In this document: piece by piece, positions 42,301-58,696 of the stretch
Position numbering within the stretch: position 1 is the stretch's first letter
Layout of the letters: each line of letters starts with the position of its first letter
Source of the DNA: Lytechinus pictus
Lineage: Eukaryota
Assembly (NCBI RefSeq): GCF_037042905.1
Contig: NC_087253.1
Span: forward strand, 25,048,001-25,112,000
Reading direction: 5' to 3'
Length of the DNA stretch: 64,000 bases
Position numbers and translations under genes: made by a program
The notes under the pieces: generated by a model
Told to the model about the DNA's origin: nothing
Seen by the model: only the letters and a program-made list of their open reading frames with translations
Databases searched by the model: none

Positions 42301-45300
42301 GATGCCGGTGGCGCATGGATGGTCAGTACCTATTCATACTTATTATCATCAACGGACCCATTTATCCCTATTTATTGACATGTTCATGATGTGATTCTAT
42401 TTTGTATTTCTATTTTGTGGTAGTGCGGTATTTCTCATCGAAATCATCTTCAGGATTATATTACCGACCAAGGCAATGTATTTCATCGAACGAGCGAATT
42501 TCGAGAAATTGCATTCTAACAACATTCCCTATTATGCGCGGGAATATGTCCTTAGAGAAGGGTAGGGGTTGCCTTCTGATTTTCCGAGTGAAAATTGGGA
42601 AGGAGGGAGAAAGAGAAAGAATTGTAAGAAAAGTAGGAAAAACAGGAGAGGTTCGGGCGGGTCGTATTATTCTGATATCTCTATAATTCACAAAATACAT
42701 TACAGAAAATCACATTGTCTTACGGCTATTGCCCCCTCCGCATTTCAAGTCAAATATCCTGGCACTCAATGCTCCTGCCCTGCATGCCCCATTGAATTTC
42801 AATCAGAATATGGCAAAAACGGGAATTTATCTTTTTTTTCTCAGAGTGATAAAACGGCTTATTATTGATTTTGTATTTGTTGTTTTTTTAACTGCAACTT
42901 TCGAGGATTTAATATTAACCAAGAACGACTGGTTTAATAATAGTGTCCATCTGAAAACTAGATAAAGACTCAAGCATTGTTTTTGGCAGATGATGACATA
43001 TCCCCACTTGTTCTTATGTATTTTATTAAGGCGGCAATTGCCCTCACGAATACAATTTTTGAGCGAAGAGGAGAGAGGCCACTGCCGCCAAACACGGAGT
43101 CTCGTTAGAAAAAAAAGAAAAGGGGGAGAGACGGAGAGATATCCGCTCTGGGCGATATGCATGCAGCGCATGCTGCACAGTCATGACAGTGGGCCTTTCG
43201 AGCGAGTTGCACGCACGCTAAATAGTAAGGGCACTGATCGAGCGAAAAGCCAGTGAATGGAGAGAAGACGGAATTTAGGAGGGTTCTCTGCTCGAAACCG
43301 AAGCAGACTCAGTGGCGAGGCTCAAATTTCTGACAAGTATGTCTTAAAAACAAAACTTTCATGATGAATCTCGTTCATTTCAAAACTTAGTAATGACAAT
43401 ATCTAGCGTGTTTCACGGTTGTCGGTCAGGGTTGTCGGGGACATTCACGGTTGTCGGCCAAGGCTCACAAAACTTTCACGGTTGTCGGCGGCCGACAAAG
43501 GTGACGCGTGTTGGCGAGAACGTTGGTGATTACCAATATTTACAACTTTTAAAAATTCATAACTTTCTTGTTGTTTGTCCAATATTGTTCAAACTTTCAC
43601 CTATCAACTTGTCTGATTTTTCTGTTCCTTATTTAAACAAGTTTTTATTTGGGTTGGATTCCCCTTTAACTACACAAATCTCAATCAACTTCAAATGGAG
43701 ATTTATTTGAATTTATCGCAACTCTTTGTATGAGAGGGGCCAGGTTGGTATCTCACAAAGCTGTTTGAATATCATTTAGCACAAGAAAGGGTCACCATTC
43801 ATATGTAATATCATGCTTTAAGCCATGTGTTACTTTGTGCGTAATTTACAAACAGCTTTATGAAAAGGCCCCAGGGGAGTGTTTCATCAACATTTTCATC
43901 CGACAAGTTGTCAGATCTGACATCTTTCTCTGATGTTGATTGGCTGAGAGGTACTGTTACTATGGTAACTGTCGGATAAAATGGGACTTGTCAGATAAAA
44001 CGTCCGACAAGTCCTTTCATGAAACGCCCCCCAGATGTGTCAAAAATATTATGAAATCTTCCTTTATTTCAGCTTGATTGGCATCATGATTATTTTGCAG
44101 ATAAGGTAAACAAGATTAAATATGTACTTACCGTTGTGACCTCTCCAACCCTGAGGTTGATAGGTTCATCTTCATAGTTGAAGGTATCGCTCTCAGATGC
44201 CTGAAAACCGGGAGGTTCATAGTCCATAGGCGTTACTGCAGAGGTGATAAATTCACCAGTGAATAGTTATATTATATTGGATGGCTCAGTATGCGATATA
44301 AGAAATATTCAACAAGTTAGGGAATATTGTCAGAAATATTGCACAATTCAAAGATGAGTGCAACATTGGCAACTATCAAGTGGAATTTTTCTGCCATCAC
44401 ATGATGGAAAAGCATGAAATATCAATTGTTATCATCTTCAATGATCATTATTCATCAGACTGAGCAATAATTTTCTTTAGCAAACATTATCCTGCACTTA
44501 ACCCAGGTGAGGTAAATGGGTAAGCTGCAGGAATTTATTCCTTGAAAAACTGTGCATAACACCTGCTCTGCTGAAGCCAGGTTAATTACTAGAATGCTGA
44601 TTACAGTAGAGCACTTTAGAGACCTCTGATAAGTATTAAGCACTATGCAAGCAAGTATAATTATTCGGGGTCCAGCGTATGTTGCAATACGCTCTGAAGC
44701 CTCTGATAATACACAGGAAAATCATTATGACCTAAATATATATTTTTTTTATTGATCGGAGTCCAAACATACCATCATCATAGTAAAGTAGTTTCATAGT
44801 CATCATGACATCATCAGGGAGAAGCTTGAGGGACTGTGTCAGTACTAAGATGGTCCTGAGGAGTTGAAGGGTTGCTCTCTTGGTCTGGGCCTCTGTGTGA
44901 GCCCCTGTAATCTTCTCTTTATTCCTATATCAATATTTAGATTATTTCAATTCAATTCATTTTTTACTCAATTAATTTATATCCACTTTTTCCACAATAG
45001 CATTCAGAATACCTATCCATAATAATTGCAGGTCCCAAAACGCTCAAAATAATTATTACTGTATACATTGCGTAACACATACAGAGAGAGGGACTGTGTC
45101 AATACTCTGATGGTCCTGAGAAGCTGGACTCCTGCTGGGCCCCGTCTTACAAAGAGTTACGATTGATCCGGTCAATCGCAACTATGGACGGCCAGCAACG
45201 TCAACATCTATTCTGCATGTTTGTTCAAAATATTTTTTAGCTATGACGTATATTCATGCATTCCATTGTTTTCTTGAAAATTGACTGTGCTTCTCTTTGC

Positions 45301-48300
45301 ATACAAAGGACATTGTGCATATTTTTTGTAGAAAAAAATTATGACACTAATGGATTTCCATAGTTACATTGATTGGATCAATTGGATCCTCTTTGTAAGA
45401 CGGGGCCCTGGAGGCTTGCTCTCTTGTTCTTGTCCCCACAATCTAACAATATCCAATTGTTTAAAGTACAAAAATGAATATAAAATTAATGATTGTCGTC
45501 AATTTGAGGAGCAACGGCAAGAACTTATGAACGCTCTGAACCTTTATGGATTGAAACGAGTATTCTTAAAACTTTACATACCTGTAGATATCAACATCTG
45601 GTCCATGTTTGGAATAGCTGAACTTGAAAGTGTATGTCTCAATAGCAGTCTGAAAAGTTAAGAAGAAGAGATATAGGACTAGCATAATATTTCAATAACA
45701 TTTCCAAGTCTGTGTAGAGTTCCCCAAGTAATGTTTTAGTGACAACAGTTTATTGCTTTAAAACAGCAATATATTCTTCACATTTAACATTTCTATTCAT
45801 GGTTAAGTCCAAAATGTATTAATAGTAACATTTTTCCAAATATTTTCTCTAATTTTTCAATAACTATTGTAATATAATGTTCATTTTGATACAATTCATA
45901 GAATATTATTGCTGCAAGTTGTATAAAATATTTTCTTCACCATAGGCCTACATGTAGCCATTCATTTTGATATAAAAAGTTTCCATAATTCTTCGCTTCA
46001 TTAACAATGATAGTTTTGTTATATTTTCGTACTCATCATTATAGACATCCTTATAGACAGGGAATCTTATATTAAGTCTTCAGTCTTATACCAGACTATA
46101 GTTAAAGCAAGACATTTTTATTTAAGTCAAAAATCCGAAAACAAAAGGGGTCTAATTGCAATATAAACCTATCTGCTTACATTTTAAAATTACGGCATAT
46201 CATTTTATATCATCTTACTTTGTGACTGAGATAATGTTTACTTACATTAGGATCACTTGGGTCAGTATACATCTGGTGATGGTAAAAACAGAGTTTGTTA
46301 TCTTTCATCTACATATATTAGGAATACCTTATTTATAATTTACAGACAGACATATTTTTATTTTTCCCCAGTGCAATCACACAATTATGAGAATGGTTAT
46401 AATCAGTGGTCCGTAACACAAAGCTTAGCAATGATCGTAGAACATTTTTCTACAATTGATTCCATCGACTACATTGTAAAATCAATCGTAAGAATCAAGT
46501 GTACGATTAATCGCAAACCTTTGTGTTACGGGACTCTTATCTGCAAGATGTTTTTAGGGGGAAAATCAAGGAACATTGACAAAAAAAACAATTACATATT
46601 TTTTTATGATTAGGTACAATGTAATTCGCAATCAGTCATATATCCTCTTAAAAATTCTAATGACAGTGTACTAGCAAAACTTTAAACAAAACTACAATAT
46701 TGATCCATCATGACACAAGCTATTTTCTATTAATTGTACAAGTAATATGTGCTTGCATGAGAAAAAACAAAATAACATAAGTTATATAAAAAAGGGTATT
46801 TCTCTGTTTTTAATTCTTTAAAGAAATACTCTGTTTATAATTTTTGTTCTTTTATTTTACTCATGGAAGCACACATTACTTTATCCCCAAAGAATCATTT
46901 TGCAGCTACCAATATATAAGATTACTGTTATCCCACATATATTATTTTTCTACTCTCTTTTTAAATTTCACCATATGACAATTATTTTATTATTTTCACA
47001 TGTCATTTGTTATCATTACTGATATTGTATATATTGTGTATTTTACTTTGTAACAAAAATCACATTTCAGCCTTTGGCTGCAATGAAATTTTCTTTAATA
47101 ATAAACCACTTAAATTTTAATTAACTTCCTCAACTTCATAAAATATTCCCATTCCTTTATATTTAAAAAAAAAGTAATATGGATCCAAATCAAAAGATTT
47201 GCTGAAATACATCATGCGACCAGTCATTTATTTTACCCGAGAGAAAAATTTGAGACTAATAATACTCATACTAATATGCAACAATTATAGCGCTTAATAC
47301 AATGTTTCCAAGCACTGCATACTATTACCCCAGCTATAGCAAGGCTATCCTGACCGGACGATTGAGTGTTCAAGAAATTCCTTCCTAACAGGTACCCATT
47401 TACTACACCTGGGTGGAGAGTGGCAAATGTAGATAAACGCCTTCCAAAAGGATGCGAGTGCGATTTGGGATTTGAACCCCAGACCATGTGGTTCAAAGTC
47501 TGGAGACTTATCCACTGAGCCACAACACCTTTACTAATGACTAGTGATATTGATGGATCATGTTTTCGAGAAAAAAATAGTTTATCAAATAACAGGGATC
47601 CACATCACTATCTTTTAAAGGCCACCGCACACCTTACGACTGTTCGCGATCTGATTTTGGAACAAATCGCACTTTCTAATTTTCTGAAAATGTGAATGGA
47701 ACATATCTTTTTATTTGACGTTAAAATTAATTGAAAGAATGCTAATATACCGCAGCCATTTTGAAAGATTGTAAACCTTTATTTTGGAGTAAAGGCCAAA
47801 TTAGTTTCAAATCAAGTCATTTTGACTAGATATTAAATTCGCTTTTATTCTAAGAAGGATGATAGCATAGTCACAGATTTGAACATAGGTATTCGTACAA
47901 TGATTTTGAACCTTACACAGTAAGATATTCCAAGTCTCAATATTAGCATGAAATTCTCAACATTTTATTCTGAAATCGGGTCGCAGACCAATCGTAAGGT
48001 GTGTGTTCGCCTTAAGACATAGGAGGATTTAGCTCAGGCATTGATTAGGATAATTACATGTATGTAATCAGTGTAAACAGTGTTGGGCTAATCCTGTATT
48101 CTATTTTATGAAACACAATGAAATGACCATTACACCATTCATACTTTTTTAGGTATCTAAGAAATACAAGCCCTGGTGGGTGTTTCATAAAGCTGCTCGT
48201 AAGATAAGAGCGACTTTAAGAACGACTGGTGATCCTTTCTTTTGGTAAATGGTATACACCATACATGCCATAGACGATGGTTTAGCGCGTAAGAAAGGAT

Positions 48301-51300
48301 CACCAGTCGTTCTTAAAGTCGCTCTTAACTTACGAACAGCTTTATGAAACGGGCCCCTGATTTTAATTTAGGTTTCACTAGTTTTGTTTTTCTGCAGAAG
48401 CCTCTTTTCCAATTTATTGTACAAAGTAGTCATTGAATACTTTGTTATTTTCCAGACATGCTTATTTTATCAACTTTGTATTGTAATCTAATTATACTTT
48501 GTGTATCATGTATGAATTATTATGGATTATGATTATTATTCTTTGTTTATCATGTATGTATTATTATGAAGTATGATCATAATTATTCTTTGTTTTATTA
48601 TGAATTGTAAATGAAACAAGAGTGGGAAAAAATTAATTGAAATCAAACCAAATCAAATCGATTATTTACACTTGCTACCTTTGAAGCAATTCAAACTCCT
48701 ATATCAATACCTCAGGATGTTAGAACTGTTCCAACCCAGGTAAAAAAACCAGTTGAAACCAGTTGAAATTTTAACTGGTTTCAACTGGAGTCAACTGGTA
48801 CCAGTTGAAACCAATTGGCACAACTGGTAAACTCCCACCATACCAGTATATTCCAGTTGAAACCCATTGTCCCAACTGGACATGCTGAAAACATACAAGT
48901 TTATTCCAGTTGAAACCAATTAACTATACTGGTATAAATTAGTACACCAGTTAATACCAGTTAAACCAATAGGCCTTTCTGGTTTATCTACCAATAGATT
49001 CCAGTTTAAAACCCATTAGCCAAACTGGACCATTTGATGCCAGTTGGAACCCATAGAAACCCAATAGGTGTATATACCAGTTAATGCCACCTTAAACCCA
49101 TAAACCATACTGGTATATCATTAAACCAATTGATACCAGTTAGAACCAACATGCATTACTGGTATACCTACCAGTTGATTCCAGTTAAAACCCATTAACC
49201 AAACTGGATCAGAGTGTTCCAGTTGGAACCCATAGACCTCCCATAACCCCACTTGAAACCCATTAACCATACTGGAATATCAAACCAATGGATACCAGTT
49301 AGAACCAATATAGGCATTACTGGCATATCTACCAGCTGATTCCAGTTAAAAGCCATAAACCATACTGGAGCAGATTATACCAGTTGGAACCCATATACCT
49401 CCCATAACCCACTTGAAACCCATTAACCATACTGGAATTTCAAACCAATTGATACCAGTTAAATCCAGCATACATTACTGGTATACTACCAGTTGATTCC
49501 AGTTAAAAGCCATAAACCATACTGGACATATTTTACCAGTTGGAACCCATAAGTTGGAACCCATAGACCTACCATAACCCACTTGAAACCCATTACCATA
49601 CTGGAATATCAAACCAATTGATACCAGTTAGAACCAATAGGCATTACCAGTATATATCTACCAGCTGATTTCAGTTAAAACCCATAAACCAAACTGGAAC
49701 AGATTTTACCAGTTGGAACCCATAGGCCACCCATAACCCACTTGAAACCCATTAACCATACTGGAATATCAAACCAAATGATACCAGTTAGAACCAATAG
49801 GACTTACCAGTTGATTCTAGTAAGAACCTGTATATACATATATAATATATACATATATAATATATACATATATAATATATACATATATAATATATACATA
49901 TATATATATGTATATAAGAGGCAGAGTGGTAATGCATTGTACTTATTTCCAACAGAGTTTATATATACATGTATATATGTATATATATTATATAAGAACT
50001 ATGTTTTCATACCTTTGTTGTTTTATTTGTCGCTTCTCTTAAACTGTAACTGACTTTTGAAATATTTTTGTAATTGTTGATATCTGCAGTAATCATTCAA
50101 ATTTCTTACCCGACAAGTCACTGGATCAATATAGCTGTAACCCACTTTACATTAATATTTATATTTTTTGTACAGATCCTATTACTTCAAAGTCCTCTTA
50201 TCTTTGTTTTTAATTCCTTTTAAAATAATTCTTTATGATTATCATTCATGAATGTGTTTCCTATAACTATTATTATTGTAACCATCAACACAGCGTTACT
50301 TTTCTTAAAAAAGCAAGTATTATTTCATACAATCCACTCTTTAATCTACATGTATTGTTATTTATTCAACATTGGTTAAATATATATTTATGTGAAAATG
50401 TTCATTATGTTAAAGGTATATACATTTAGCCTACTCCCAACCTTTGCCCGTTCCTGCTTTTGACATTACCTCCCCCCCCCCCTGTATACTTTTCTTTTTG
50501 TATCCCCTTTCCAATATTATACATTAGTATACTTTGTTATTTTTTTGTTGCTTATTTGTTTACTGAAATTTTGCTCTGTACAAATTCATGAAATTCAGCC
50601 TTTTACCACAATAAATGCCATGCATTTATCCATCCTATATATATATATATATATATATACGTTGTTGTGATTAAAACAGCTCGATTGAGGATAAGAGGAA
50701 AAAAATATCTACATAATAACGAACTTAATTATTCTTTATGTTAATTTTAATATTTCCACCTTGAAAAGTTTCATTAAAGTATGTGGTTCGATATTACCAT
50801 ATAACTTAAATCGAAACATGTTATTCTCAGTGAAATTTTCTAGTTTACATTTAAAAAATTGTTATCCTAGATATTTGTTGCGAGAAAAAATATTTCTTCC
50901 TATTTAATCCCTTTTTTCTAATTTAAGTTAAAGAGGACTATTTTACACTATTTTTTCAAATCATATAAAAATTAGTGTATTTTTCTTTTTTTTAACTCAC
51001 TGATATTTTAAAAATATTTTTGAAGGTGAATAGAATAGCTATTTTTTTCTATTTATAACGCGCATATTTATTGCTAGTTTACAACCTTGTCATGTTAAGC
51101 AAGGCTATCTTTATCTTTCAAAGAAAAAGAAAATAAATGAAATAGAAATAAAGAACAAATATTAAGCTAATTCATTCTTAAACTTCCAAAGAAAAAAAAA
51201 AAGCTCCAAAAGCTGAGGCAAAAATCGTCATTTCTAGACTGGTTGCCAACTAAAACCAAACAAGAAGAAATTTTTTATGTTAAGAAGTTCGTATATATCT

Positions 51301-54300
51301 ATTTTAAAACTTCTTTCTTGCTTTAGACCCCCCCCCCCCTTCATTATTCCTGACTCAGCAGATCTTCCTTCAATCAACGGGCGCGGGCGGGCCTGCGCAT
51401 GCGCACTGAGTGCCACTGATCGCTATCGTCCGTATAATTATGCAAATTAACCAGCCGCCAAAAGCAAACGCAAACCGCCAGTCCGCCAATCTAATTTGAA
51501 TTTGAAATAGCCATCTTCGCCGCGCCGTTAATTTGCACTGCACTTTTATAGAGTACGATAAAGAAGGGTAAAGAAGGCCGTTTTAATAATAATTCAACCA
51601 CTGAAATCACACGGACCAGATTTGGACAATGACTTGAAAGCTAAGACATTCGCAGTAGGCTCTACAGGTAAGTTAACAATTTTCTATGATTTTCTTTTCG
51701 TAGTTTGTTAAATGGCGCGGCTCGCAGCTAGCTGCGGGGCTAGCTGTAACGTTAGAGTTCGTCAGGACATCCTATTACTGCCCCTCAGCGCTGCCTGCCG
51801 GCCGCGACTACTCGGGCGTGGATGTGTGGCTGCCATGCCGGTGCAAGTCTGCGCACATACATCATATTGACCTTACGATTTGTGTTAAGATTTAACATGA
51901 ATTTCTTTTCATTTCACAAAATCTTTCAGTTGATATTGTTCCATATATTGTTATAAGTAAGTACCGGTATGCAAAATAAATCTATTTAGAAAATGAGAGA
52001 GATATGTGATCGAATGTGAAACTGATTTTCTTGGGAAAAATCTGAGACTCGGCCAGTTATGATTTTCAATTTCAGATTTAACATTATGATAGTTGCCAGT
52101 GCCTCGTGTCTGCGCACCAATAACTTTACACACGATTTGAGGATTTTGATGAGAATCACATGAAATGCCGAAAATCGAAATTCATTATTTTTTCCACCAT
52201 TTTAAGAGTCAGATTTTTTCATGAATAGCTGTTTATCACTTTTTGACTGTGTGTATTTCAGGAGCTAGGAGAGAGGGAGACCCAAAACCACCTGGAGTCA
52301 TACTGAGCCTCGAGGAGGAGATGAAGTCAGTGAACATGACCTAGGGGGCAGCTGGGGTACCGGTAGTTTCCAGAAGAAGGCCCAGCTCAGAACCGCCAGG
52401 AGTGGAGATCCGAATACTTCGTTGCTGCCCTCCATGCGAGGAGGCTGTAAGTTAGGTAATTCAGATGTCAAGTTTTCTTTTGGGGTCTTTGTGTATCTTC
52501 TATTATGAGAATTATGGAAAAGAGATGGTGATTTCATAGTTTTAAAGATGTAAAACAGGGGCCGCGGAACCGGGGGAGCTGGGGGGGCTTCAGCCCCCCC
52601 ACTTTTTTCCAAAACCGTGTACAAAAACGTAAAAATTACCATAAGATTGTGATTTTTAGCATGGTCAGCCCCCCCACTTTGAAAACCGTTCCGCGGCCCC
52701 TGTAAAATATGAAATTCTAGCACTTTTTTTAGGCCTAATAATTTTTTTTGAGGAGCGCGATATTTTTGTACATGACCCAAGCCTAGTTTCACCACAGATT
52801 AATTAATAGCTACACAGCTGTTGCATTTACAATTTTAATAACAATCTACAACAATTGAGCATTTTATAAAATTGAGTGTGTCTAGGAAAGCAAATTCGGA
52901 GGAGCTCGATTGAGCTCCTCAAAAACATAAGGAGAGCCATTTATTGAGCTCCATGGAATTATAAACATGAAGGACTGATCTCTGCGACATCGATTTCAGA
53001 AGTATTCCCAAGACCAAGTGAACTTACTCATTTTTTAAATAAATATGATGATGTGCTGTTTATCATTATAGTTTAATCATTGATTCACAATCCCATGTAT
53101 TTTTCTTAATGTGCAAATGGAATTTTACAACACTTTGTAGTAACCCTTGCTCGCCTTAGGTGTAGACATGTATTGCTATTCACTGTAATATAGACGTATT
53201 TGTTATTCACTGTTCACCGTACTGATTATTTTTCTCTCCATTGTTTAAAAAAAAATTCTTCAGATACATCGCATCTACCAGCAAAGAATGTGTGCCAGTA
53301 AAGGAAAGGAATGTACCTGTCGCACATGAACTCTTCAGAGGCAGTGAGGACAACAAGATCTGCAAGCAAGTGATCCTTTTTGTAAGAAAATTTCCAATTT
53401 GTACATTTTACAATTAATTTTTTTTAAAGCCTTTGTACACATTTAGAGTATCAAGGCTTACAAAATGTAAAAATGTAATGTTTGCCCAAAAATCATTATG
53501 GGGAAAGGTGGATTTCCGAGGGAAATCTATCTTTGTTTACACAGTTGTATGAGCAACCTTATAGGAGGCTTGTCTAGGCTCCGTGATGAAAATACAATGT
53601 AAAAATGATAAAATTATCTTCATGGAGTCCTCTAGGCTAGCCAGTGACATGGGTCCATGCCCATCAATTTTAATTCATGCTTTTGCATAACCAAATGGCG
53701 TGAATTTAAAACTGGAAGTATAATTTCAGATTGACCTCCGAAATGAAACGTGCACAATTAGTCTGAACTAAAATAACATTTCCTGAATTTTTCTTAAATC
53801 TGGAGGCTGAGGTATTTTTGTATCTTTGAAATTAAATTGGTTCTCGTTGTTTTTACCTCTGACTTACCAGTATGTGTAGGGATACCATAGAAGTAGAATT
53901 AAAGGGATGGTCCAGGCTGGAAACATATCTCAATAAATAGAGTAAAATTCACAGAGCAAAATGCTGAAAACTTGATCAAATTGGATAACTAATTAAGGTT
54001 TTGAATTTTAAAGATTTGCATTATTCCGGTGAAATAGTTCTAGGCATGTCTTTATGAATATTCATTAGGTTGACTGATGATGTCATATCCCAATTGCCCT
54101 TTTGTATTTTATTATATGAGATTAGGTTTATTAAGATATTTTTAACCAAGAACTATTGACAATTGGATTGACAACTGATTAGGTGCATTAGTTATTGACG
54201 CAACTTATTTCATTACAATGGAGACGCATCATTTACACATGTATGAAAAAATCAAACATTTATGATTTCATCTAGTAACATAAAAAAAGGAAAGTGGAGA

Positions 54301-57300
54301 TGTGACATCAGCCCACCTAATGAATATTCATGACGAAGTGCATACAACTGTTTTCACAAAATATTGATAAACTTTAAAATTCAATAACTTCTTGTTATCC
54401 TATTTTGATGAAATTTTCATCATTTTGCTCTGTGAATTTTACTCAAGTATTATTTAGATGTAAATATTTTCGGCCCGGACCATCCCTTTAATCCTCGGAT
54501 AAAATTTTGAATTTCAATTTTTTTTTGCTTTGTCTTGCGTTTTTAAACATGCTCTGGGAACTGCTTTTTGAAAGTTGTCAGCATTAACAAGTTGTCTTTT
54601 TCCGACAGTTACCATAGTAACAGTCAGAGGCCAGTGCTTCTCAGCCAATCAAAAGCAATGATTTCACTGAAATAGTCGGCACTGACAATCATGAAATACC
54701 CATCAGATGTTAGCAGATAATGTGCAACATAGACTCCTAGATACATATATGCAAACATACATAGTCTAAGTCTTTATTATTAAAATAAATGTATAGGTAT
54801 AAGGTCGAGGCAATTTCATCTCTGCGATGTCAATTTCAGAAGTATTCCCAAGACCATGTGAACTTACTATACATGTTGTAATAAAAATGATGATGTGCTG
54901 TCTATCATTTATAATTGAATCATTGAAATATGGAACTTAGAGAAGTTTCACTATCCCATGTATTTTCTTTATGTGCAGATATAATTTTACACCCCTGAAA
55001 TTTTGTATTACGGTATTCACTGTACTTATTATTTTTAATTCCATTGTTTTTTTTTTCTAATCTTCAGATACATCGCATCTACCAGCAAAGATCAAGTGCC
55101 ACTACAGGAAAGGAAGGTACCTGTCTCATGTTTCCTCTTCAGAGCCAGTGAGGGCCCCAAGATCTCAATAAATAATAATTAAAAAAAGACTCGTTTATCA
55201 TTCCTTTAAAAATAGTACATATTGAAGGTAAATGCTTAGATGCATTATATTCAAATTTTGTCTCCAAGCTAGCTTGTAAAAATTGGATTGACTACATATT
55301 TACTGTGTAAGTTAATGATCTTTGTTGACACATAATACAAGAATTATACACAGCATGTTACAGTTTGTAACATAATTTTCTTTCATTAAATTCCCAGTTT
55401 TAATACCATATAGATGTTTTTTGTGACTTGTCATTCTCTGATGTTTTTTGGTACAGATTTCAAGAGACTGAGGGATTGATTTACCAGAGCAAGTTTACAG
55501 TCCAATCCTGTTATATTGTGCATGTGGAAATTAACAAGGTTTCAATACAATGCTACAAATTTACCTTGATTCCTTTCATCAGTCCTATGTGCAAGGATAA
55601 TTATTTCACTTGTCCATGCACATTGTTATAACAGGAGTGGACATTCAATGTAAAGATAATTGAAGATAATTAATTGAAATAAGTTAATAACCGCCTGAGA
55701 GGGGGGGGGGGGTGTTGGCACCAATATTCTAATGTGTGTGTGCGCAAGGAAAACGAAGGAGTGATTATACGAGAAGAGTGAAAGATCAGGAATGTACATA
55801 TCCACATGATTCATTTTTGTTTATGCTATACATTGCAGGGTGTTTCTAACTGGTACCACTTGACAATTTGTGTTTCCAACTGGTCCTAACTGGTGCTTCC
55901 AACTTGTTCTAACTGGCACCAGTTGACAACTGGTGTTTCCAACTGGTTTTAACTGGCACCAGTTGACAACTCATGTTGCCAACTGGTCCTAACTGGCACC
56001 AGTTGACAATTGGTGTTTCCAACTGGTTTTAACTGGCACCAGTTGACAACTCATGTTTCCAACTGGTCCTAACTGGCACCAGTTGACAATTTGTGTTTCC
56101 AACTGGTTTTAACTGGCACCAGTTGACAACTCATGTTTCCAACTGGTCCTAACTGGCACCAGTTTACAATTGGTGTTTCCAACTGGTTTTAACTGGCACC
56201 AGTTGACAACTCGTGTTTCTAACTGGTCCTAACTGGTACCAGTTTCCAACTGGTACCAGTTGCCAACTGGTATTTCCAACTGGTACCAGTTACAATTTGT
56301 CAACTGGATTCCAGTTGATTCCATTATTGGAATCAACTGGATTCCAGTTGATTCCAGTATTCCAATTTCCATATTGAATCCAGTTCGCTAACTGGAATCA
56401 ACTGGTACCAGTACCAGTTGGATGAACTGGTACTTAACTGGTTTTTTTACCTGGGAAGGGAAACATTGTGTGTATAATTCTTACCAAATGTCCCTGCTGT
56501 GCATTAGTTATAGATAATATGAATTTTCACACACAACGACTACAACTATTAAAGGGACTTACCCCAATGATCATGGCACGGAGCTGAGTAAAGACGGAAG
56601 TAGAGAAAGAAAAAGAGATAGAGAACATTATAAACAGAACATGGACTTTGAACCATGTAATAATGTGTGTTTGTTAATTGTAAATCATTTCCTTTGATCA
56701 GCTCTGAACATTCCAAGTAGACAAGAACATTATATAAATAGTTATAGAATGTACTTGCAATGTCAATAGAGTCAAGGTGGGTGTTGTTTATAGAGCTGTT
56801 CGAAAGATAAGAGAGACTTAAGGAACGACCGGTGAACCTTTCTTACGTGCTAAATAATCACCAATGAACATTTAATGATGAATATCATTTCCCAAAAGAA
56901 AGGATCACCAGCAGTTCATAAAGTCACTCATAACTTACAAAGAGCTTATGAAACGGCCCCTGGGAGTAAAACTCAAACCATTGAAACATTTGATCAGTTT
57001 ACCAAAAATCAGCAACCGAATACAACTTTTTACACTAAATCTAATGTTTGCCGGATGTTAATTACTGATTTCAAATAATGCCACAATGAAAGGTCAATAC
57101 AGGTACTTACATATCGTTTATCCAATGCATCAAATGCCCCTTTCATCCATTTAATGACTTGGCATGCTCCCGGACAGGCGCTGTCATCTCGAAGAATCTT
57201 CAGATTTAGATCTATGAACGAATAGTGTATGATTTACTGTACAATCCAAAGCAATGTATCATAAAATTCTGACATCCCCATTGGAATTGTGTGCATACGA

Positions 57301-58696
57301 TTTGCATGTGCCAGTAATGGTGATGGCCTCCCATATGATGATTTAATACATTAATAAACAATTGCATGGATTTTGGACAACTATGTCTGCATCCAATAGG
57401 AAAAGAAAAAACAGATTATACAAATTCTTTAAGGTGAAAAGCCCAATAATAAATAAGGTTTCCATCAAAAATACTACAGATCTGTGCTTCATCAGCCTTT
57501 CATTGATTTTGTTGTATTTTCCTTTGACAGGTTCTCAGTGCTCTTTTGAAGATCAGGGGCCCATCTTACAAAGAATTGCATTTGATCAGTACAATTGCAA
57601 CTATGGAAAGCCAGCATTGCACACATCTAAAATGCATGTTTGTTCCAAAAAAATTTTTCTAGATATGATGTATATTCATACATTCGTTTTATTGAAAATT
57701 TGGTGTGTTCGCCTTTATTTACAAAGGACATTTTGCAAATTTCCTGTAGAAAAAATTATGACACCGATGGATTTCCATAGAGTTACGATTGATTGGATCA
57801 AACGTAACTCATTGTAAGACAGGGCCCAGGGGAATATTTCATGAAATAAATCTATTTTTCACTGACTAATTTACTCTGAACCAATCAGATGCAAGCATTC
57901 AGTAGCTTATAACAAATAGTGAAAATACCGTTTCACGAAATACATAATGTAGGCATATACAGATAAAACTTAATCCCATTAATAGACCTACAGTTGAATA
58001 TCCGCAATATCCTTTGAAATGTTTCAAGTAGAGCTGGGAAAGAATTTAAGATAAACTTTGCCAAATAGACATACCTTCAAGAGATCTGTCACCAAATGCA
58101 TGTTCTGGGAAGATTGTCCTCAAATAAGTCACAGTAGAGACGGCTACAGCCAGGAGTTTCTTCACAAAGATGGCCGACTGCTGTTGGGTAACTTGGTCTG
58201 GAGGGAAGATGGCTGACCACTGAGGAAGACAAGAGACATACAAATTGAGTTTATTCATTTTAATCATGTTATTGTTGGTAAGAAGTTTTATTGACAACTG
58301 ACAACTGATGAAATTAGTTGACACTGAATCATTGAAGGAGCAGGGTTCAAATCCTTACTTGATTAAGTATTGAGAAAATAAAATCATTCTAGTCATTTAA
58401 AGATGCTACCAATTGTTTTGAGGGTAATGTCACTCCTGTGGACTTATTCAAGTCAAGCGATGGGTAACAGCTAGGAATTTGTAATACTGTCCCCTTTTTG
58501 TGATCAATGGACAAAAAAATGGTCATCATATTCATCATCATGATCACCAATATCATCATCATCGTCGTCATGGCCATCATCATTCATCACCATCAACATC
58601 ATAATACCTACATGTATTTGTTTTTAATCCAAACATACTAAAAAAGCTTACCTGGCCAGTTTTTGTCTTTTGTCGTATCGCCGTTGCAACTGCCAT
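30314..58696 (-). CDS. HORMAD1: Meiotic HORMA-domain protein (HORMAD1/Hop1 type), 599 aa, 18 coding exons: 58696-58652, 58219-58075, 57211-57111, 56583-56563, 46272-46246, 45649-45582, 44924-44773, 44235-44132, 39319-39309, 38250-38100, 37614-37536, 37180-37071, 36213-36097, 34924-34695, 33912-33726, 32951-32853, 32155-32102, 30412-30314
   Basis: HORMA domain (WSAIFPPDQVTQQQSAIFVKKLLAVAVSTVTYLRTIFPEHAFGDR; WMKGAFDALDKRYL; MKLLYYDDVTPMDYEPPGF; NLRVGEVTTPFH), PHD finger (CPC...CEKCHYWQHAVC...CNQC), winged-helix-like segment, and C-terminal SQE...KRRKSS. All exon phases close to give 1800 nt. An extra in-frame exon in the N gap 32352-32823 cannot be excluded, and HORMAD1 versus HORMAD2 naming is not resolvable from sequence alone. 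Confidence 0.93.
30767..31240. mobile_element. MITE, TIR CAGAGCTGCCAA/TTGGCAGGTCTG, 6-bp TSD GGAATG
   Basis: Imperfect TIR and TSD visible. Confidence 0.75.
31437..31887. mobile_element. MITE, TIR CAGGGTGCTACATAA, 7-bp TSD CCTAAAA
   Basis: Perfect 15-bp TIR; internal ACTTGCCCG/CGGGCAAGT motifs. Confidence 0.85.
35390..36190. repeat. ~200-bp tandem repeat made of the 3' part of the HORMAD PHD exon plus its donor and intron
   Basis: CTTACCCTGCCACATTG at 36092, 35890 and 35704, degenerate at 35500. Confidence 0.9.
37262..37511. repeat. (AGAC/AGAT/AAAG)n microsatellite
   Basis: Direct inspection. Confidence 0.85.
39309..39319 (-). CDS. HORMAD1: 11-nt coding microexon of HORMAD (CCCTTCCACAC, P-F-H-T)
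   Basis: tcctttcag|CCCTTCCACAC|gtaagt. It is required to bridge the phase-0 donor at 44132 and the phase-2 acceptor at 38250, and it supplies the conserved PFH. Confidence 0.9.
40184..43665. mobile_element. TTAA-flanked non-autonomous element (Kolobok-like termini AGGGGAATCCA), split by a nested insertion
   Basis: ttaa|aggggaatcca...tggattcccct|ttaa. Confidence 0.8.
40642..43525. mobile_element. 2.9-kb nested DNA transposon (hAT/P-like), TIR CAACGTTCTCGCCA, 8-bp TSD GTGATTAC
   Basis: Perfect 14-bp TIR; identical 8-bp duplication at 40634-40641 and 43526-43533; subterminal TTCACGGTTGTCGG repeats; no intact ORF. Confidence 0.9.
43873..44033. mobile_element. Short MITE carrying a GTTACTATGGTAAC palindrome and CCAAT
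   Basis: gtttcatc(a)...atgaaacgcccccc arms; related sequence at 54570-54700. Confidence 0.65.
45137..45408. mobile_element. ~270-bp MITE, TIR GGGCCCCGTCTTACAAAGAG
   Basis: Perfect TIR; second copy at 57556-57827. Confidence 0.85.
47283..47527 (-). mobile_element. tRNA-derived SINE, diverged relative of 3997-4268
   Basis: TGGCTCAGTGG / GGTTCAAATCC boxes; shared body ACCCAGGTG...AAATGGGTACC. Confidence 0.75.
48175..48357. mobile_element. ~185-bp palindromic MITE (GTTTCATAAAGCTG...CAGCTTTATGAAAC family)
   Basis: Long inverted arms; related copies at 21672-21852, 21853-22040, 43740-43873 and 56776-56961. Confidence 0.8.
48735..49820. repeat. Left subterminal repeat array (CCAGTT/AACTGG motifs, about 160-170-bp higher-order unit)
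   Basis: CCACTTGAAACCCATTA(A)CCATACTGGAAT recurs near 49249, 49409, 49579 and 49738. Confidence 0.85.
51380..51673 (+). promoter_or_regulatory. Transposon-internal Pol II promoter and first exon
   Basis: GC box at 51385, perfect NRF1 palindrome TGCGCATGCGCA at 51394-51405, octamer ATGCAAAT at 51440-51447, CCAAT at 51486, tandem TTTGAA at 51495-51506, consensus donor CAG|gtaagt at 51668. Confidence 0.6.
52556..52702. mobile_element. MITE with CAGGGGCCGCGGAAC TIRs, 5-bp TSD (TAAAA)
   Basis: TIR pair and TSD visible; second family member at 62867-63012. Confidence 0.85.
53903..54487. mobile_element. TTAA-flanked MITE nested in the 7.7-kb element
   Basis: ttaa|agggatggtcc...ggaccatccct|ttaa. 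Confidence 0.85.
55840..56455. repeat. Right subterminal array: 40-bp tandem units alternating as an 80-bp dimer
   Basis: AACTGGCACCAGTTGACAA(C/T)T...GTTTCCAACTGGT(TT/CC)T repeated from 55911 to about 56240. Confidence 0.9.
57556..57827. mobile_element. Second copy of the 45137-45408 MITE
   Basis: Colinear similarity and TIR remnants. Confidence 0.8.

What the first reader, a model, noticed from the sequence alone, without database searches (positions are those of the whole stretch)
48735..56455. 7.7-kb TIR transposon in a meiotic HORMAD intron carrying its own promoter and a multi-exon antisense unit
Seen: a perfect 20-bp TIR (CCCAGGTAAAAAAACCAGTT), an AA duplication, 0.6-1.1-kb subterminal arrays and no transposase ORF. 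Inside is a motif-dense CpG-rich promoter followed by a consensus donor (51668) and four further exon-like blocks, all on the + strand and so antisense to HORMAD. Known: animal CMC/EnSpm elements have CCC/CAC termini, 2-bp TSDs and subterminal repeat arrays. Inference: this is a mobile cassette carrying a spliced lncRNA, or the leader exons of a deleted transposase gene. It could interfere with HORMAD transcription or form dsRNA/piRNA substrate in the germ line.
Basis: partly seen in the sequence, partly recalled or inferred. Interest (0 to 1): 0.75.

Follow-up and report, generated by a model that had tools for sequence, protein, structure and literature searches.

The report
Transcribed non-coding transposon in HORMAD intron
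A real, recently mobile 7.7-kb cut-and-paste transposon with no transposase gene sits in an intron of a sea-urchin meiosis gene (HORMAD1-like); its family of about 60 copies carries its own promoter and makes a spliced non-coding RNA, which is a neat but not unprecedented kind of mobile DNA.

Summary
The 20-bp ends are perfect inverted repeats. A 2-bp target duplication flanks this copy and six other copies with both ends in hand. The ends occur about 120 times in the 812-Mb genome, which makes about 60 copies, mostly 7.5-8.6 kb and about 99% alike. No copy examined encodes a transposase.

All copies share a CpG-island promoter. Stranded RNA reads show + strand RNA starting near 51560. They show three GT-AG introns: 51667^52269, 52455^53264 and 53381^55068. 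The predicted 55227^55457 junction was not seen. The spliced RNA has no usable reading frame.

The reads carry the letters of other copies, so expression is shown for the family, not for this copy.

The host gene is HORMAD1-like on the - strand, so the unit is antisense to it.

A 24.1-kb relative in the same genome has CCCAG ends, a 2-bp duplication, ACCAGT arrays and a 774-aa tnp2 (PF02992) transposase. This ties the element to the CMC/EnSpm kind. Its cargo is unrelated, and no partner with identical ends was found.

Effects on HORMAD (dsRNA, piRNA) are untested. The scan's notes hold no earlier record of this family on other DNA.

The parts
48733..48734 (.). left copy of the 2-bp target-site duplication (AA)
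   Evidence: six other copies have GC, CA, AT, TT, CC and AA
48735..48754 (+). left terminal inverted repeat CCCAGGTAAAAAAACCAGTT
48755..49810 (+). left subterminal array of ACCAGTT/AACTGGT motifs (includes a 329-bp unit x2.2); likely transposase-binding sites (inferred)
   Evidence: no CpG here
51330..51559 (+). promoter: CpG-rich (observed/expected 1.29), with GCGCATGCGC palindrome, ATGCAAAT octamer and TATA-like TTTTATAGAG at 51545-51554; this copy has a private 14-nt insertion
   Evidence: RNA depth rises from about 1 to 33 just downstream
51330..51880 (.). CpG island (49% G+C, observed/expected 1.13) spanning promoter, exon 1 and the start of intron 1
51560..51667 (+). exon 1 (5' end approximate), donor CAG|GTAAGT
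   Evidence: joint 51667^52269, 22 reads at 17 starts in X10, also in an X1 contig
52269..52455 (+). exon 2; looks like a frameshifted relic of a LINE ORF2 C-terminal tail (recollection, not tested)
   Evidence: joints 51667^52269 and 52455^53264 (12 reads); translations
52549..52701 (.). nested 152-bp MITE in intron 2, private to this copy (TIR CAGGGGCCGCGGAAC, flanked by TGTAAAA repeats)
   Evidence: reads and contigs of other copies skip it (joint 52548-52701)
53264..53381 (+). exon 3
   Evidence: joints 52455^53264 and 53381^55068 (19 reads at 17 starts)
52978..53365 (+). internal duplication, first copy (covers exon 3); second copy at 54818-55168 (covers the start of exon 4), 83-87% alike
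53895..54495 (.). nested 600-bp foldback MITE in intron 3 (41-85-nt inverted arms), shared with some other copies
   Evidence: I2, I5, I8
55068..55215 (+). exon 4 (last exon seen); AATAAA at 55168; 3' end unresolved (depth falls after 55215 in X10, but an X1 contig runs on past 55850)
   Evidence: tables 2, 5 and 8
55840..56435 (+). right subterminal array (40/80-bp units x9.2/4.3) of AACTGG/CCAGTT motifs
56436..56455 (-). right terminal inverted repeat (exact reverse complement of the left one)
56456..56457 (.). right copy of the 2-bp target-site duplication (AA)
58058..58180 (-). host context: HORMAD1-like exon (HORMA profile positions 1-41); the next exon lies at about 57111-57212 (-)
44774..44914 (-). 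host context: HORMAD1-like exon downstream of the insertion (HORMA profile positions 123-169)

Best explanation
This is one copy of a young, non-autonomous cut-and-paste DNA transposon family of the CMC (CACTA/EnSpm-like) kind. The family has about 60 copies of about 8 kb in what earlier notes of this scan call Lytechinus pictus.

Shown: 20-bp TIRs starting CCCAG, 2-bp target duplications without sequence preference, 0.6-1.1-kb subterminal arrays of ACCAGTT motifs, no transposase in the copies examined, and copies about 99.3-99.8% identical to their subfamily consensus.

Inferred: the element is moved in trans by a tnp2-type (PF02992) transposase that binds the ACCAGT motifs and cuts at the CCCAG ends. 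The nearest candidate is the 774-aa ORF of a 24.1-kb relative on contig 19, but its motifs (mostly ACCAGTA) and its TIR (15-16 of 20 identical) differ. The true partner is therefore not identified.

Shown at family level: the body carries a CpG-island Pol II promoter. It drives a + strand RNA of at least four exons with GT-AG introns and no open reading frame, present in one RNA sample and absent in another.

Inferred: this unit is passenger DNA that rides along without a demonstrated function. It looks like a mosaic of a housekeeping-type promoter, a probable LINE-tail relic (exon 2) and a duplicated exon (exons 3 and 4). It was either captured or left over from an ancestor.

This copy landed in an intron inside the HORMA-domain part of a HORMAD1-like gene, with its unit antisense to the gene. 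Nothing shows that this copy is transcribed or affects HORMAD.
For: - Ends, duplication and arrays.
- Copy number: 60+62 end matches against 6+2 for the control. The cargo is present in 40 or more loci.
- Target duplications: 2 bp in 7 of 7 copies (AA, AA, GC, CA, AT, TT, CC).
- Youth: subfamily-B copies are about 99.5% identical to their consensus, and this copy has 26 mismatches in 3580 aligned bases against subfamily A.
- No ORF. The 13-kb and 22-kb copies are ordinary copies with nested insertions and no transposase.
- RNA: depth rises from about 1 to 33 at about 51564. Reads are nearly all first-mate-on-minus. The three GT..AG joints have 22, 12 and 19 reads at 10-17 distinct starts. Contigs of a second study (X1) carry the first two joints. 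Sample X11 is silent.
- No ORF in the spliced model.
- CpG island.
- Relative with transposase: C19:508574-532683 is 24,110 bp, with TIR CCCAGAAGGAA[A/G]AACCAGT, a GA duplication, ACCAGT arrays at both ends and PF02992 at 36.1 bits (cut-off 28.6). A second, broken copy on contig 2 shows the same linkage of end and transposase.
- Host gene.
Against: - No transposase-bearing element with this family's own TIR exists among the about 122 end matches, and no PF02992 or C19-like hit lies near any of them.
- Five of the other tnp2 loci fetched show no ACCAGT arrays within the 10 kb fetched.
- The ends are CCC..GGG. The literature gives 5'-CA..TG-3' / CAC..GTG as the usual CMC termini (PMC12730594, PMC4079192).
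- The cargo has no nucleotide similarity to the 24-kb relative, and no parental host locus was found, so its origin is open.
- Expressed reads carry subfamily-B letters (50 of 52 at 51811-12). Letters private to this copy appear in about 2 of 206 reads. With about 60 copies that neither shows nor excludes expression here.
- Intron 1's first 230 nt have more depth (48) than exon 1 (33). The transcript model is therefore incomplete.
Confidence: 0.8

Rival explanations
1. The transcription unit is what remains of the ancestral autonomous element's own gene. Promoter, leader exons and last exon would have been kept after an internal deletion removed the coding exons. This is the classic Ac/Ds or Spm/dSpm pattern (established knowledge).
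For: The unit lies inside the element in a fixed orientation in every copy seen. Exons 3 and 4 keep a short open frame, and in exon 4 it ends in a stop codon right at the AATAAA signal. Earlier notes of this scan describe deletion derivatives of giant EnSpm elements in this genome.
Against: There is no nucleotide similarity between this cargo and the only related transposase-bearing element found, nor with six other tnp2 loci. Exon 2 looks like a LINE relic rather than a transposon exon. No longer sister element with the same ends exists in the assembly.
Confidence: 0.3
2. The cargo was captured from host chromosomal DNA, as in the Pack-CACTA elements of plants. It would be a housekeeping-type CpG-island promoter with its first exon, plus intronic or repeat pieces, now copied around the genome.
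For: The promoter has motifs typical of cellular genes (GCGCATGCGC, ATGCAAAT) and a CpG island. The body is mosaic: a probable LINE-tail relic, an internal duplication and nested MITEs. The first look at the genome finds 177-195 candidate loci for promoter or exon 2, more than the about 60 copies.
Against: No parental locus was identified. All 40 scored hits in each search are element copies or fragments of them. Pack-TYPE elements are described from plants (PMC8903248, PMC6379663).
Confidence: 0.35
3. The spliced RNA is a selected function. It could be a regulatory RNA that the element needs, or a dispersed promoter whose antisense transcripts regulate host genes such as HORMAD or feed piRNA/dsRNA pathways.
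For: The promoter is active and the introns are spliced accurately. Expression differs between samples. All copies keep the full 8-kb body, and no short deletion derivatives appear among the end pairs.
Against: An older copy (88-95% alike) shows no better conservation of exons (22 of 543 mismatches) than of introns (104 of 2070), though a comparison between copies is a weak test. The uniform length is explained by a single recent burst. There is no Rfam family or tRNA inside. No expression of this copy is shown, and almost no - strand RNA was seen here. No small-RNA data were examined.
Confidence: 0.1
4. It is not a transposon, but a chance inverted repeat or an assembly artefact around an ordinary intronic lncRNA gene.
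For: None found.
Against: There are about 60 bounded copies at unrelated loci, each flanked by a different 2-bp duplication.
Confidence: 0.01

Closest known systems
Non-autonomous En/Spm (CACTA) elements such as dSpm, and the CMC superfamily in animals
   Same: TIRs, a very short target duplication, long subterminal arrays of a short motif at both ends, a size of about 8 kb, dependence on a transposase supplied in trans, and a relative in the same genome that encodes a tnp2/PF02992 transposase.
   Different: The termini are CCCAG..CTGGG, not CACTA/CAC..GTG. The duplication is 2 bp, where plant CACTA has 3 bp (established knowledge) and Chapaev has 3-4 bp (PMC4079192). The body is not a recognisable deletion derivative of any transposase-bearing element found here.
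The 24.1-kb element at C19:508574-532683 of the same genome (giant EnSpm-type element)
   Same: CCCAG...AACCAGT ends (15-16 of 20 identical), a 2-bp duplication, and ACCAGT-motif arrays of 0.55-0.8 kb at both ends.
   Different: It is three times longer and has a 774-aa transposase ORF. Its arrays favour ACCAGTA over ACCAGTT. Its internal sequence is unrelated. Its own short relatives (about 190 end matches) form a separate family.
Pack-CACTA / Pack-TYPE transposons of plants (PMC6379663, PMC8903248)
   Same: A non-autonomous CACTA-type element whose body is non-transposon-like, transcribed DNA.
   Different: Capture from a host locus is not shown here. The cargo is non-coding. The host is an animal.
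Transposon-borne promoters giving lncRNAs or antisense transcripts in host introns (general phenomenon, established knowledge)
   Same: An internal promoter fires independently of the host gene and gives spliced non-coding RNA.
   Different: Here the whole promoter-plus-exons unit is carried intact by a young DNA transposon family, rather than being an exapted fragment of an old insertion.

Membership tests
CMC (CACTA/EnSpm-Mirage-Chapaev) DNA transposons | Terminal inverted repeats | tested here: met
   20 of 20 complementary at 48735-48754 and 56436-56455.
CMC (CACTA/EnSpm-Mirage-Chapaev) DNA transposons | Short target-site duplication (2-5 bp in the wider clade, PMC12730594) | tested here: met
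   2 bp in 7 of 7 copies with both ends held, with six different dinucleotides.
CMC (CACTA/EnSpm-Mirage-Chapaev) DNA transposons | Termini 5'-CA..TG-3' / CAC..GTG ('in most cases', PMC12730594; Chapaev, PMC4079192) | tested here: inconclusive
   The termini are CCCAG..CTGGG, so the usual motif is absent. However, a tnp2-encoding element of the same genome has the same CCCAG termini.
CMC (CACTA/EnSpm-Mirage-Chapaev) DNA transposons | Subterminal arrays of short repeated motifs | tested here: met
   A 1.06-kb array on the left and a 0.6-kb array on the right, both of ACCAGTT/AACTGGT.
CMC (CACTA/EnSpm-Mirage-Chapaev) DNA transposons | CMC-type DDE transposase, encoded by the element or by a partner with the same ends | tested here: inconclusive
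   The element has no ORF above 165 aa. No partner with identical ends was found. A relative with 15-16 of 20 TIR identity encodes PF02992 at 36.1 bits.
Pack-TYPE (Pack-CACTA) transposons | Cargo demonstrably copied from a host chromosomal locus | tested here: inconclusive
   The 40 best genome hits for each cargo query are all element copies. The searches score only 40 of 177-1311 candidates.
Spliced long non-coding RNA gene | Transcribed from its own start site on a defined strand | tested here: met
   At family level. Depth rises from about 1 to 33 at about 51564, reads are more than 10:1 first-mate-on-minus, and the GT..AG joints are on the + strand.
Spliced long non-coding RNA gene | Introns removed at canonical sites | tested here: met
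   51667^52269, 52455^53264 and 53381^55068 have 12-22 reads each. The first two are also in contigs of a second study.
Spliced long non-coding RNA gene | No protein-coding capacity | tested here: met
   All three frames of the 546-nt spliced model are broken by stops, and there is no ATG-initiated ORF of note.
Spliced long non-coding RNA gene | Expression of this particular copy | tested here: inconclusive
   At six sites private to this copy, about 2 of 206 reads carry its letter. Equal expression of about 60 copies would give about 3.
HORMAD (meiotic HORMA-domain protein) as host gene | HORMA domain with best similarity to HORMAD1, exons on the - strand on both sides of the element | tested here: met
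   PF02301 hits at window 58058-58177 and 44774-44914, both on the - strand. The only PDB hit is 8j69_A, HORMAD1, at E=1.9e-7.

The most novel reading that the evidence does not exclude
The promoter-plus-lncRNA cassette is the payload that matters. On this reading it is an animal counterpart of Pack-CACTA elements that has recently copied an active CpG-island promoter and a spliced non-coding gene to about 60 loci. That would create sample-specific antisense transcription through host genes, including a meiotic HORMAD gene. Alternatively, it produces an RNA the element itself uses. In either case it is mobilised by a transposase whose own element does not share its ends.
Probability: 0.12. Interest if true: 0.7.

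Novelty: new member of a known kind. Interest (0 to 1): 0.42.

Why it matters
It documents a very young, probably still mobile DNA transposon family in a sea-urchin laboratory model. The evidence is clean: ends, 2-bp duplications, copy number, and RNA proof of an internal promoter and splicing. The family could serve as a natural insertion-polymorphism marker. Its ends, together with the tnp2 transposases of this genome, offer a candidate transposition system to test. For the HORMAD gene the practical point is annotation: an intronic antisense lncRNA model here would be a transposon product shared with about 60 other loci, not a locus-specific regulator. If the cargo proved to be captured host DNA, it would extend Pack-type gene capture by CACTA-like elements from plants to animals.

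Tried and rejected
- Long copies as autonomous elements. The 13-kb copy on contig 2 and the 22-kb copy on contig 8 are normal copies. They carry nested insertions of 3.4 kb and about 12 kb, the latter with CR1-like reverse-transcriptase pieces, and no transposase.
- tnp2 loci as partners. Loci on contigs 14, 1, 11, 8 and 10 have intact 657-914-aa ORFs but no ACCAGT arrays or CCCAG ends in the 10 kb fetched. Their elements may simply be larger than that.
- Cargo homology with the 24-kb relative. blastn and nhmmer found none.
- Exon versus intron conservation. There is no difference between subfamily consensuses or against an older copy.
- Known RNA families and tRNAs in the element. Nothing reached a gathering score; the only matches were weak hairpin matches in the arrays.
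- LINE-tail origin of exon 2. tblastn of its frame pieces against all DNA held found only other copies of this element. The idea rests on my recollection of the ...GRPK..W...AQ.R..WR...VAAL... tail of LINE ORF2 proteins.
- Atlas look-up of the HORMAD exon gave no usable hit.
- Searches were coordinate slips.
- Literature on 2-bp duplications in Mirage-type elements. No explicit statement was found in the papers read.


Full report
**1. Observation**

- CCCAGGTAAAAAAACCAGTT lies at 48735-48754 and its exact reverse complement at 56436-56455.
- AA stands immediately outside both ends.
- Inside the ends are arrays built on ACCAGTT/AACTGGT. The left array is 1.06 kb and includes a 329-bp unit repeated 2.2 times. 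The right array is 0.6 kb with 40/80-bp units repeated 9.2/4.3 times.
- The longest ORF in the 7721 bp is 165 aa, on the - strand, and runs through a nested MITE. There is no transposase.
- 51330-51880 is a CpG island: 49% G+C and CpG observed/expected 1.13, against 0.47 for the element and 0.62 for the window. It holds 37 of the element's 111 CpGs.

**2. It is a transposon family, and a young one**

- The 20-mer, allowing up to 2 mismatches, occurs 60+62 times in the 812-Mb genome, against 6+2 for the reversed control.
- The listed hits pair up into at least 40 elements of 7.5-8.6 kb, plus a few of 9-22 kb.
- Seven copies have both ends in hand. Their flanking dinucleotides are AA, AA, GC, CA, AT, TT and CC, each duplicated. 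This is a 2-bp target duplication with no sequence preference.
- The internal promoter/exon region is present in every one of the 40 best-scoring loci.
- In a 20-copy alignment of 4.1 kb, most copies are 99.3-99.8% identical to their subfamily consensus. The two subfamily consensuses are 98-99% identical apart from indels.
- This copy has 26 mismatches in 3580 aligned bases against subfamily A. It also has a private 152-bp MITE and a private 14-nt promoter insertion.
- An older, 88-95% identical copy (contig 8, 25.69 Mb) and a 5'-truncated copy (contig 11) also exist.

**3. The internal unit is transcribed and spliced**

One stranded, rRNA-depleted RNA run (X10) was laid on 50900-55850.
- It gives almost no depth upstream of 51563 and depth 33 from 51564 onwards.
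- Outside the two nested MITEs, reads are more than 10:1 first-mate-on-minus. In the usual stranded protocol this means + strand RNA.
- There are three joints with GT..AG on the + strand: 51667^52269 (22 reads at 17 starts), 52455^53264 (12 reads at 10 starts) and 53381^55068 (19 reads at 17 starts).
- Contigs of a run from another study (X1) carry the first two joints. A sister sample (X11) has no signal outside the MITEs.

The exon 2 boundaries are off by 7 and 9 nt. The 55227^55457 intron is not among the supported joints, and an X1 contig runs unbroken from 55068 past 55850.

In X10, depth falls about four-fold after 55215, just downstream of an AATAAA at 55168. The 3' end is therefore not resolved.

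The 546-nt spliced model is closed in all three frames.

'Goes back' joints (53604 to 53079, and 53381 to 53264) also occur in contigs. They fit a 526-bp tandem duplication present in other copies rather than circular RNA.

**4. Whose RNA is it?**

At sites that separate the subfamilies, the reads carry subfamily-B letters (50 of 52 at 51811-51812). At six sites private to this copy, its letter appears in 0/54, 0/12, 0/62, 0/34, 1/20 and 1/24 reads. With about 60 copies, equal expression would give about 3 of those 206 reads. The data therefore neither show nor exclude expression of this copy. The RNA evidence is family-level.

**5. Host gene**

- Pfam HORMA matches lie at window 58058-58177 (profile positions 1-41) and 44774-44914 (profile positions 123-169), both on the - strand.
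- A further exon, reading ...[31 protein letters not shown], lies at about 57111-57212 on the - strand.
- The first exon peptide has a single PDB match: 8j69_A, HORMA domain-containing protein 1, residues 25-61, E=1.9e-7.

The element therefore sits in an intron within the HORMA-domain coding part, with its unit antisense to the gene. Almost no - strand RNA is seen in this part of the intron, 50900-55850, in X10 or X11 outside the MITEs. These samples say nothing about sense/antisense overlap.

**6. Which kind of transposon?**

- The genome holds 12 matches to Pfam PF02992 (transposase family tnp2, the En/Spm type), several inside open frames of 650-914 aa.
- One match, on contig 19, is followed 2.3 kb downstream by an ACTGG/CCAGT array. 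That array ends in the reverse complement of CCCAGAAGGAAGAACCAGTT.
Following that lead, I extended upstream and found the left end, CCCAGAAGGAAAAACCAGT, with its own 0.8-kb array.
- The element is C19:508574-532683, 24,110 bp, flanked by a GA duplication. It has a 774-aa open frame matching PF02992 at 36.1 bits, against a cut-off of 28.6.
- A second, broken copy on contig 2 repeats the linkage of end and transposase and is collinear over more than 10 kb.

So in this genome a tnp2 transposase travels with CCCAG ends, 2-bp duplications and ACCAGT arrays, which is the architecture of the finding. The literature gives CAC..GTG or CA..TG as the usual CMC termini and 2-5-bp duplications for the wider clade (PMC4079192, PMC12730594). 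The CCC end is thus atypical but documented here.

I file the element as a non-autonomous relative of this CMC/EnSpm-type lineage, by architecture and not by a shared protein.

**7. What moves it?**

This is not settled.
- None of the about 122 end matches lies near a PF02992 hit or near a hit to the contig 19 transposase.
- The long copies are ordinary copies with nested insertions.
- The 24-kb relative's TIR matches at 15-16 of 20 positions. Its arrays favour ACCAGTA, whereas this family's favour ACCAGTT.

Cross-mobilisation by that transposase or by another tnp2 transposase is plausible but is an inference.

**8. Where does the cargo come from?**

This is not settled either.
- The cargo has no detectable similarity to the 24-kb relative (blastn and nhmmer).
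- Exon 2, read in three frames, gives ...RGRPKTTW / LEEEMKSVNMT / AQNRQEWRSEYFVAALHARR. I recognise this from memory as the C-terminal tail of LINE ORF2 proteins, broken by frameshifts. I could not test it with the tools.
- Exons 3 and 4 are 83-87% identical duplicates of each other.
- The promoter has motifs of cellular genes (GCGCATGCGC, ATGCAAAT, a TATA-like box).
- Exons are no better conserved than introns, though this is a weak test.

I take the unit to be mosaic passenger DNA. Capture (0.35) and a relic of the ancestor's own gene (0.3) are both open. A selected RNA function is unlikely (0.1).

**9. Comparison and verdict**

The element works like a non-autonomous En/Spm-type element and resembles plant Pack-CACTA elements in carrying transcribed non-transposon-like DNA (PMC6379663, PMC8903248). 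Capture from a host locus is not shown.

It is a new member of a known kind. It is of moderate interest for three reasons: its youth, the RNA-validated internal promoter and splicing, and the missing partner. The suggested effects on HORMAD remain untested.

Noticed in passing
L062+L058+L057 (C19:508574-532683): An apparently complete 24.1-kb CMC/EnSpm-type element. It has CCCAGAAGGAA[A/G]AACCAGT ends, a GA duplication, ACCAGTA arrays at both ends, CpG-rich internal regions and an open 774-aa tnp2 (PF02992) frame at C19:527560-529881. A broken sister copy lies at C2:18858168. Whether it carries a second gene was not examined.
   Followed up: partly
genome-wide: The end variant CCCAGAAGGAAAAACCAGTAAGACCAGTA has about 190 matches (0 in the control). 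This is presumably a large non-autonomous family that belongs to the 24-kb element.
   Followed up: no
window 52549-52701: A 152-bp MITE with TIR CAGGGGCCGCGGAAC, flanked by TGTAAAA repeats, inserted in intron 2 of this copy only. Its family is extremely abundant in RNA and DNA contigs (summed depth 6,000-10,000) and is read on both strands.
   Followed up: partly
window 53895-54495: A 600-bp foldback MITE with nested 41-85-nt inverted arms. It is shared by this copy, two subfamily-B copies (L041, L046) and the older copy L064, and is read on both strands in both RNA samples.
   Followed up: partly
window 48182-48350 and 56787-56947: Two copies of a palindromic MITE of about 165 bp (60-nt arms, 97% complementary) lie in the HORMAD intron, one on each side of the element. 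They are not part of it.
   Followed up: no
window 51668-51900: The first 230 nt of intron 1, which is the second half of the CpG island, have more + strand RNA depth (48) than exon 1 (33). Twelve molecules begin at 51872. Possible causes are an alternative start site, a retained intron or a stable fragment; this is unexplained.
   Followed up: no
L063 (C11:8806100-8811400): A 5'-truncated copy of the element whose similarity begins at the equivalent of window 51525, about 35 nt upstream of where RNA coverage starts. It is unspliced, so it is not a retrocopy.
   Followed up: partly
L054+L055 (C8:16192000-16208700): The 22-kb copy holds a nested block of about 12 kb that includes CR1-like LINE reverse-transcriptase pieces.
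   Followed up: partly
genome-wide: Several other tnp2-type transposase frames are open. Contigs 14 and 13 each hold a 914-aa frame, both about 53% identical to the contig 19 protein. Contigs 1 and 21 hold frames of 849 and 841 aa. Contigs 11, 8 and 10 hold frames of 852, 836 and 657 aa. This suggests several live EnSpm lineages.
   Followed up: partly
window 53079-53604: Reads and contigs join 53604 back to 53079, and 53381 back to 53264. Other copies therefore carry a 526-bp tandem duplication containing exon 3, and they splice exon 3 to its duplicate.
   Followed up: partly
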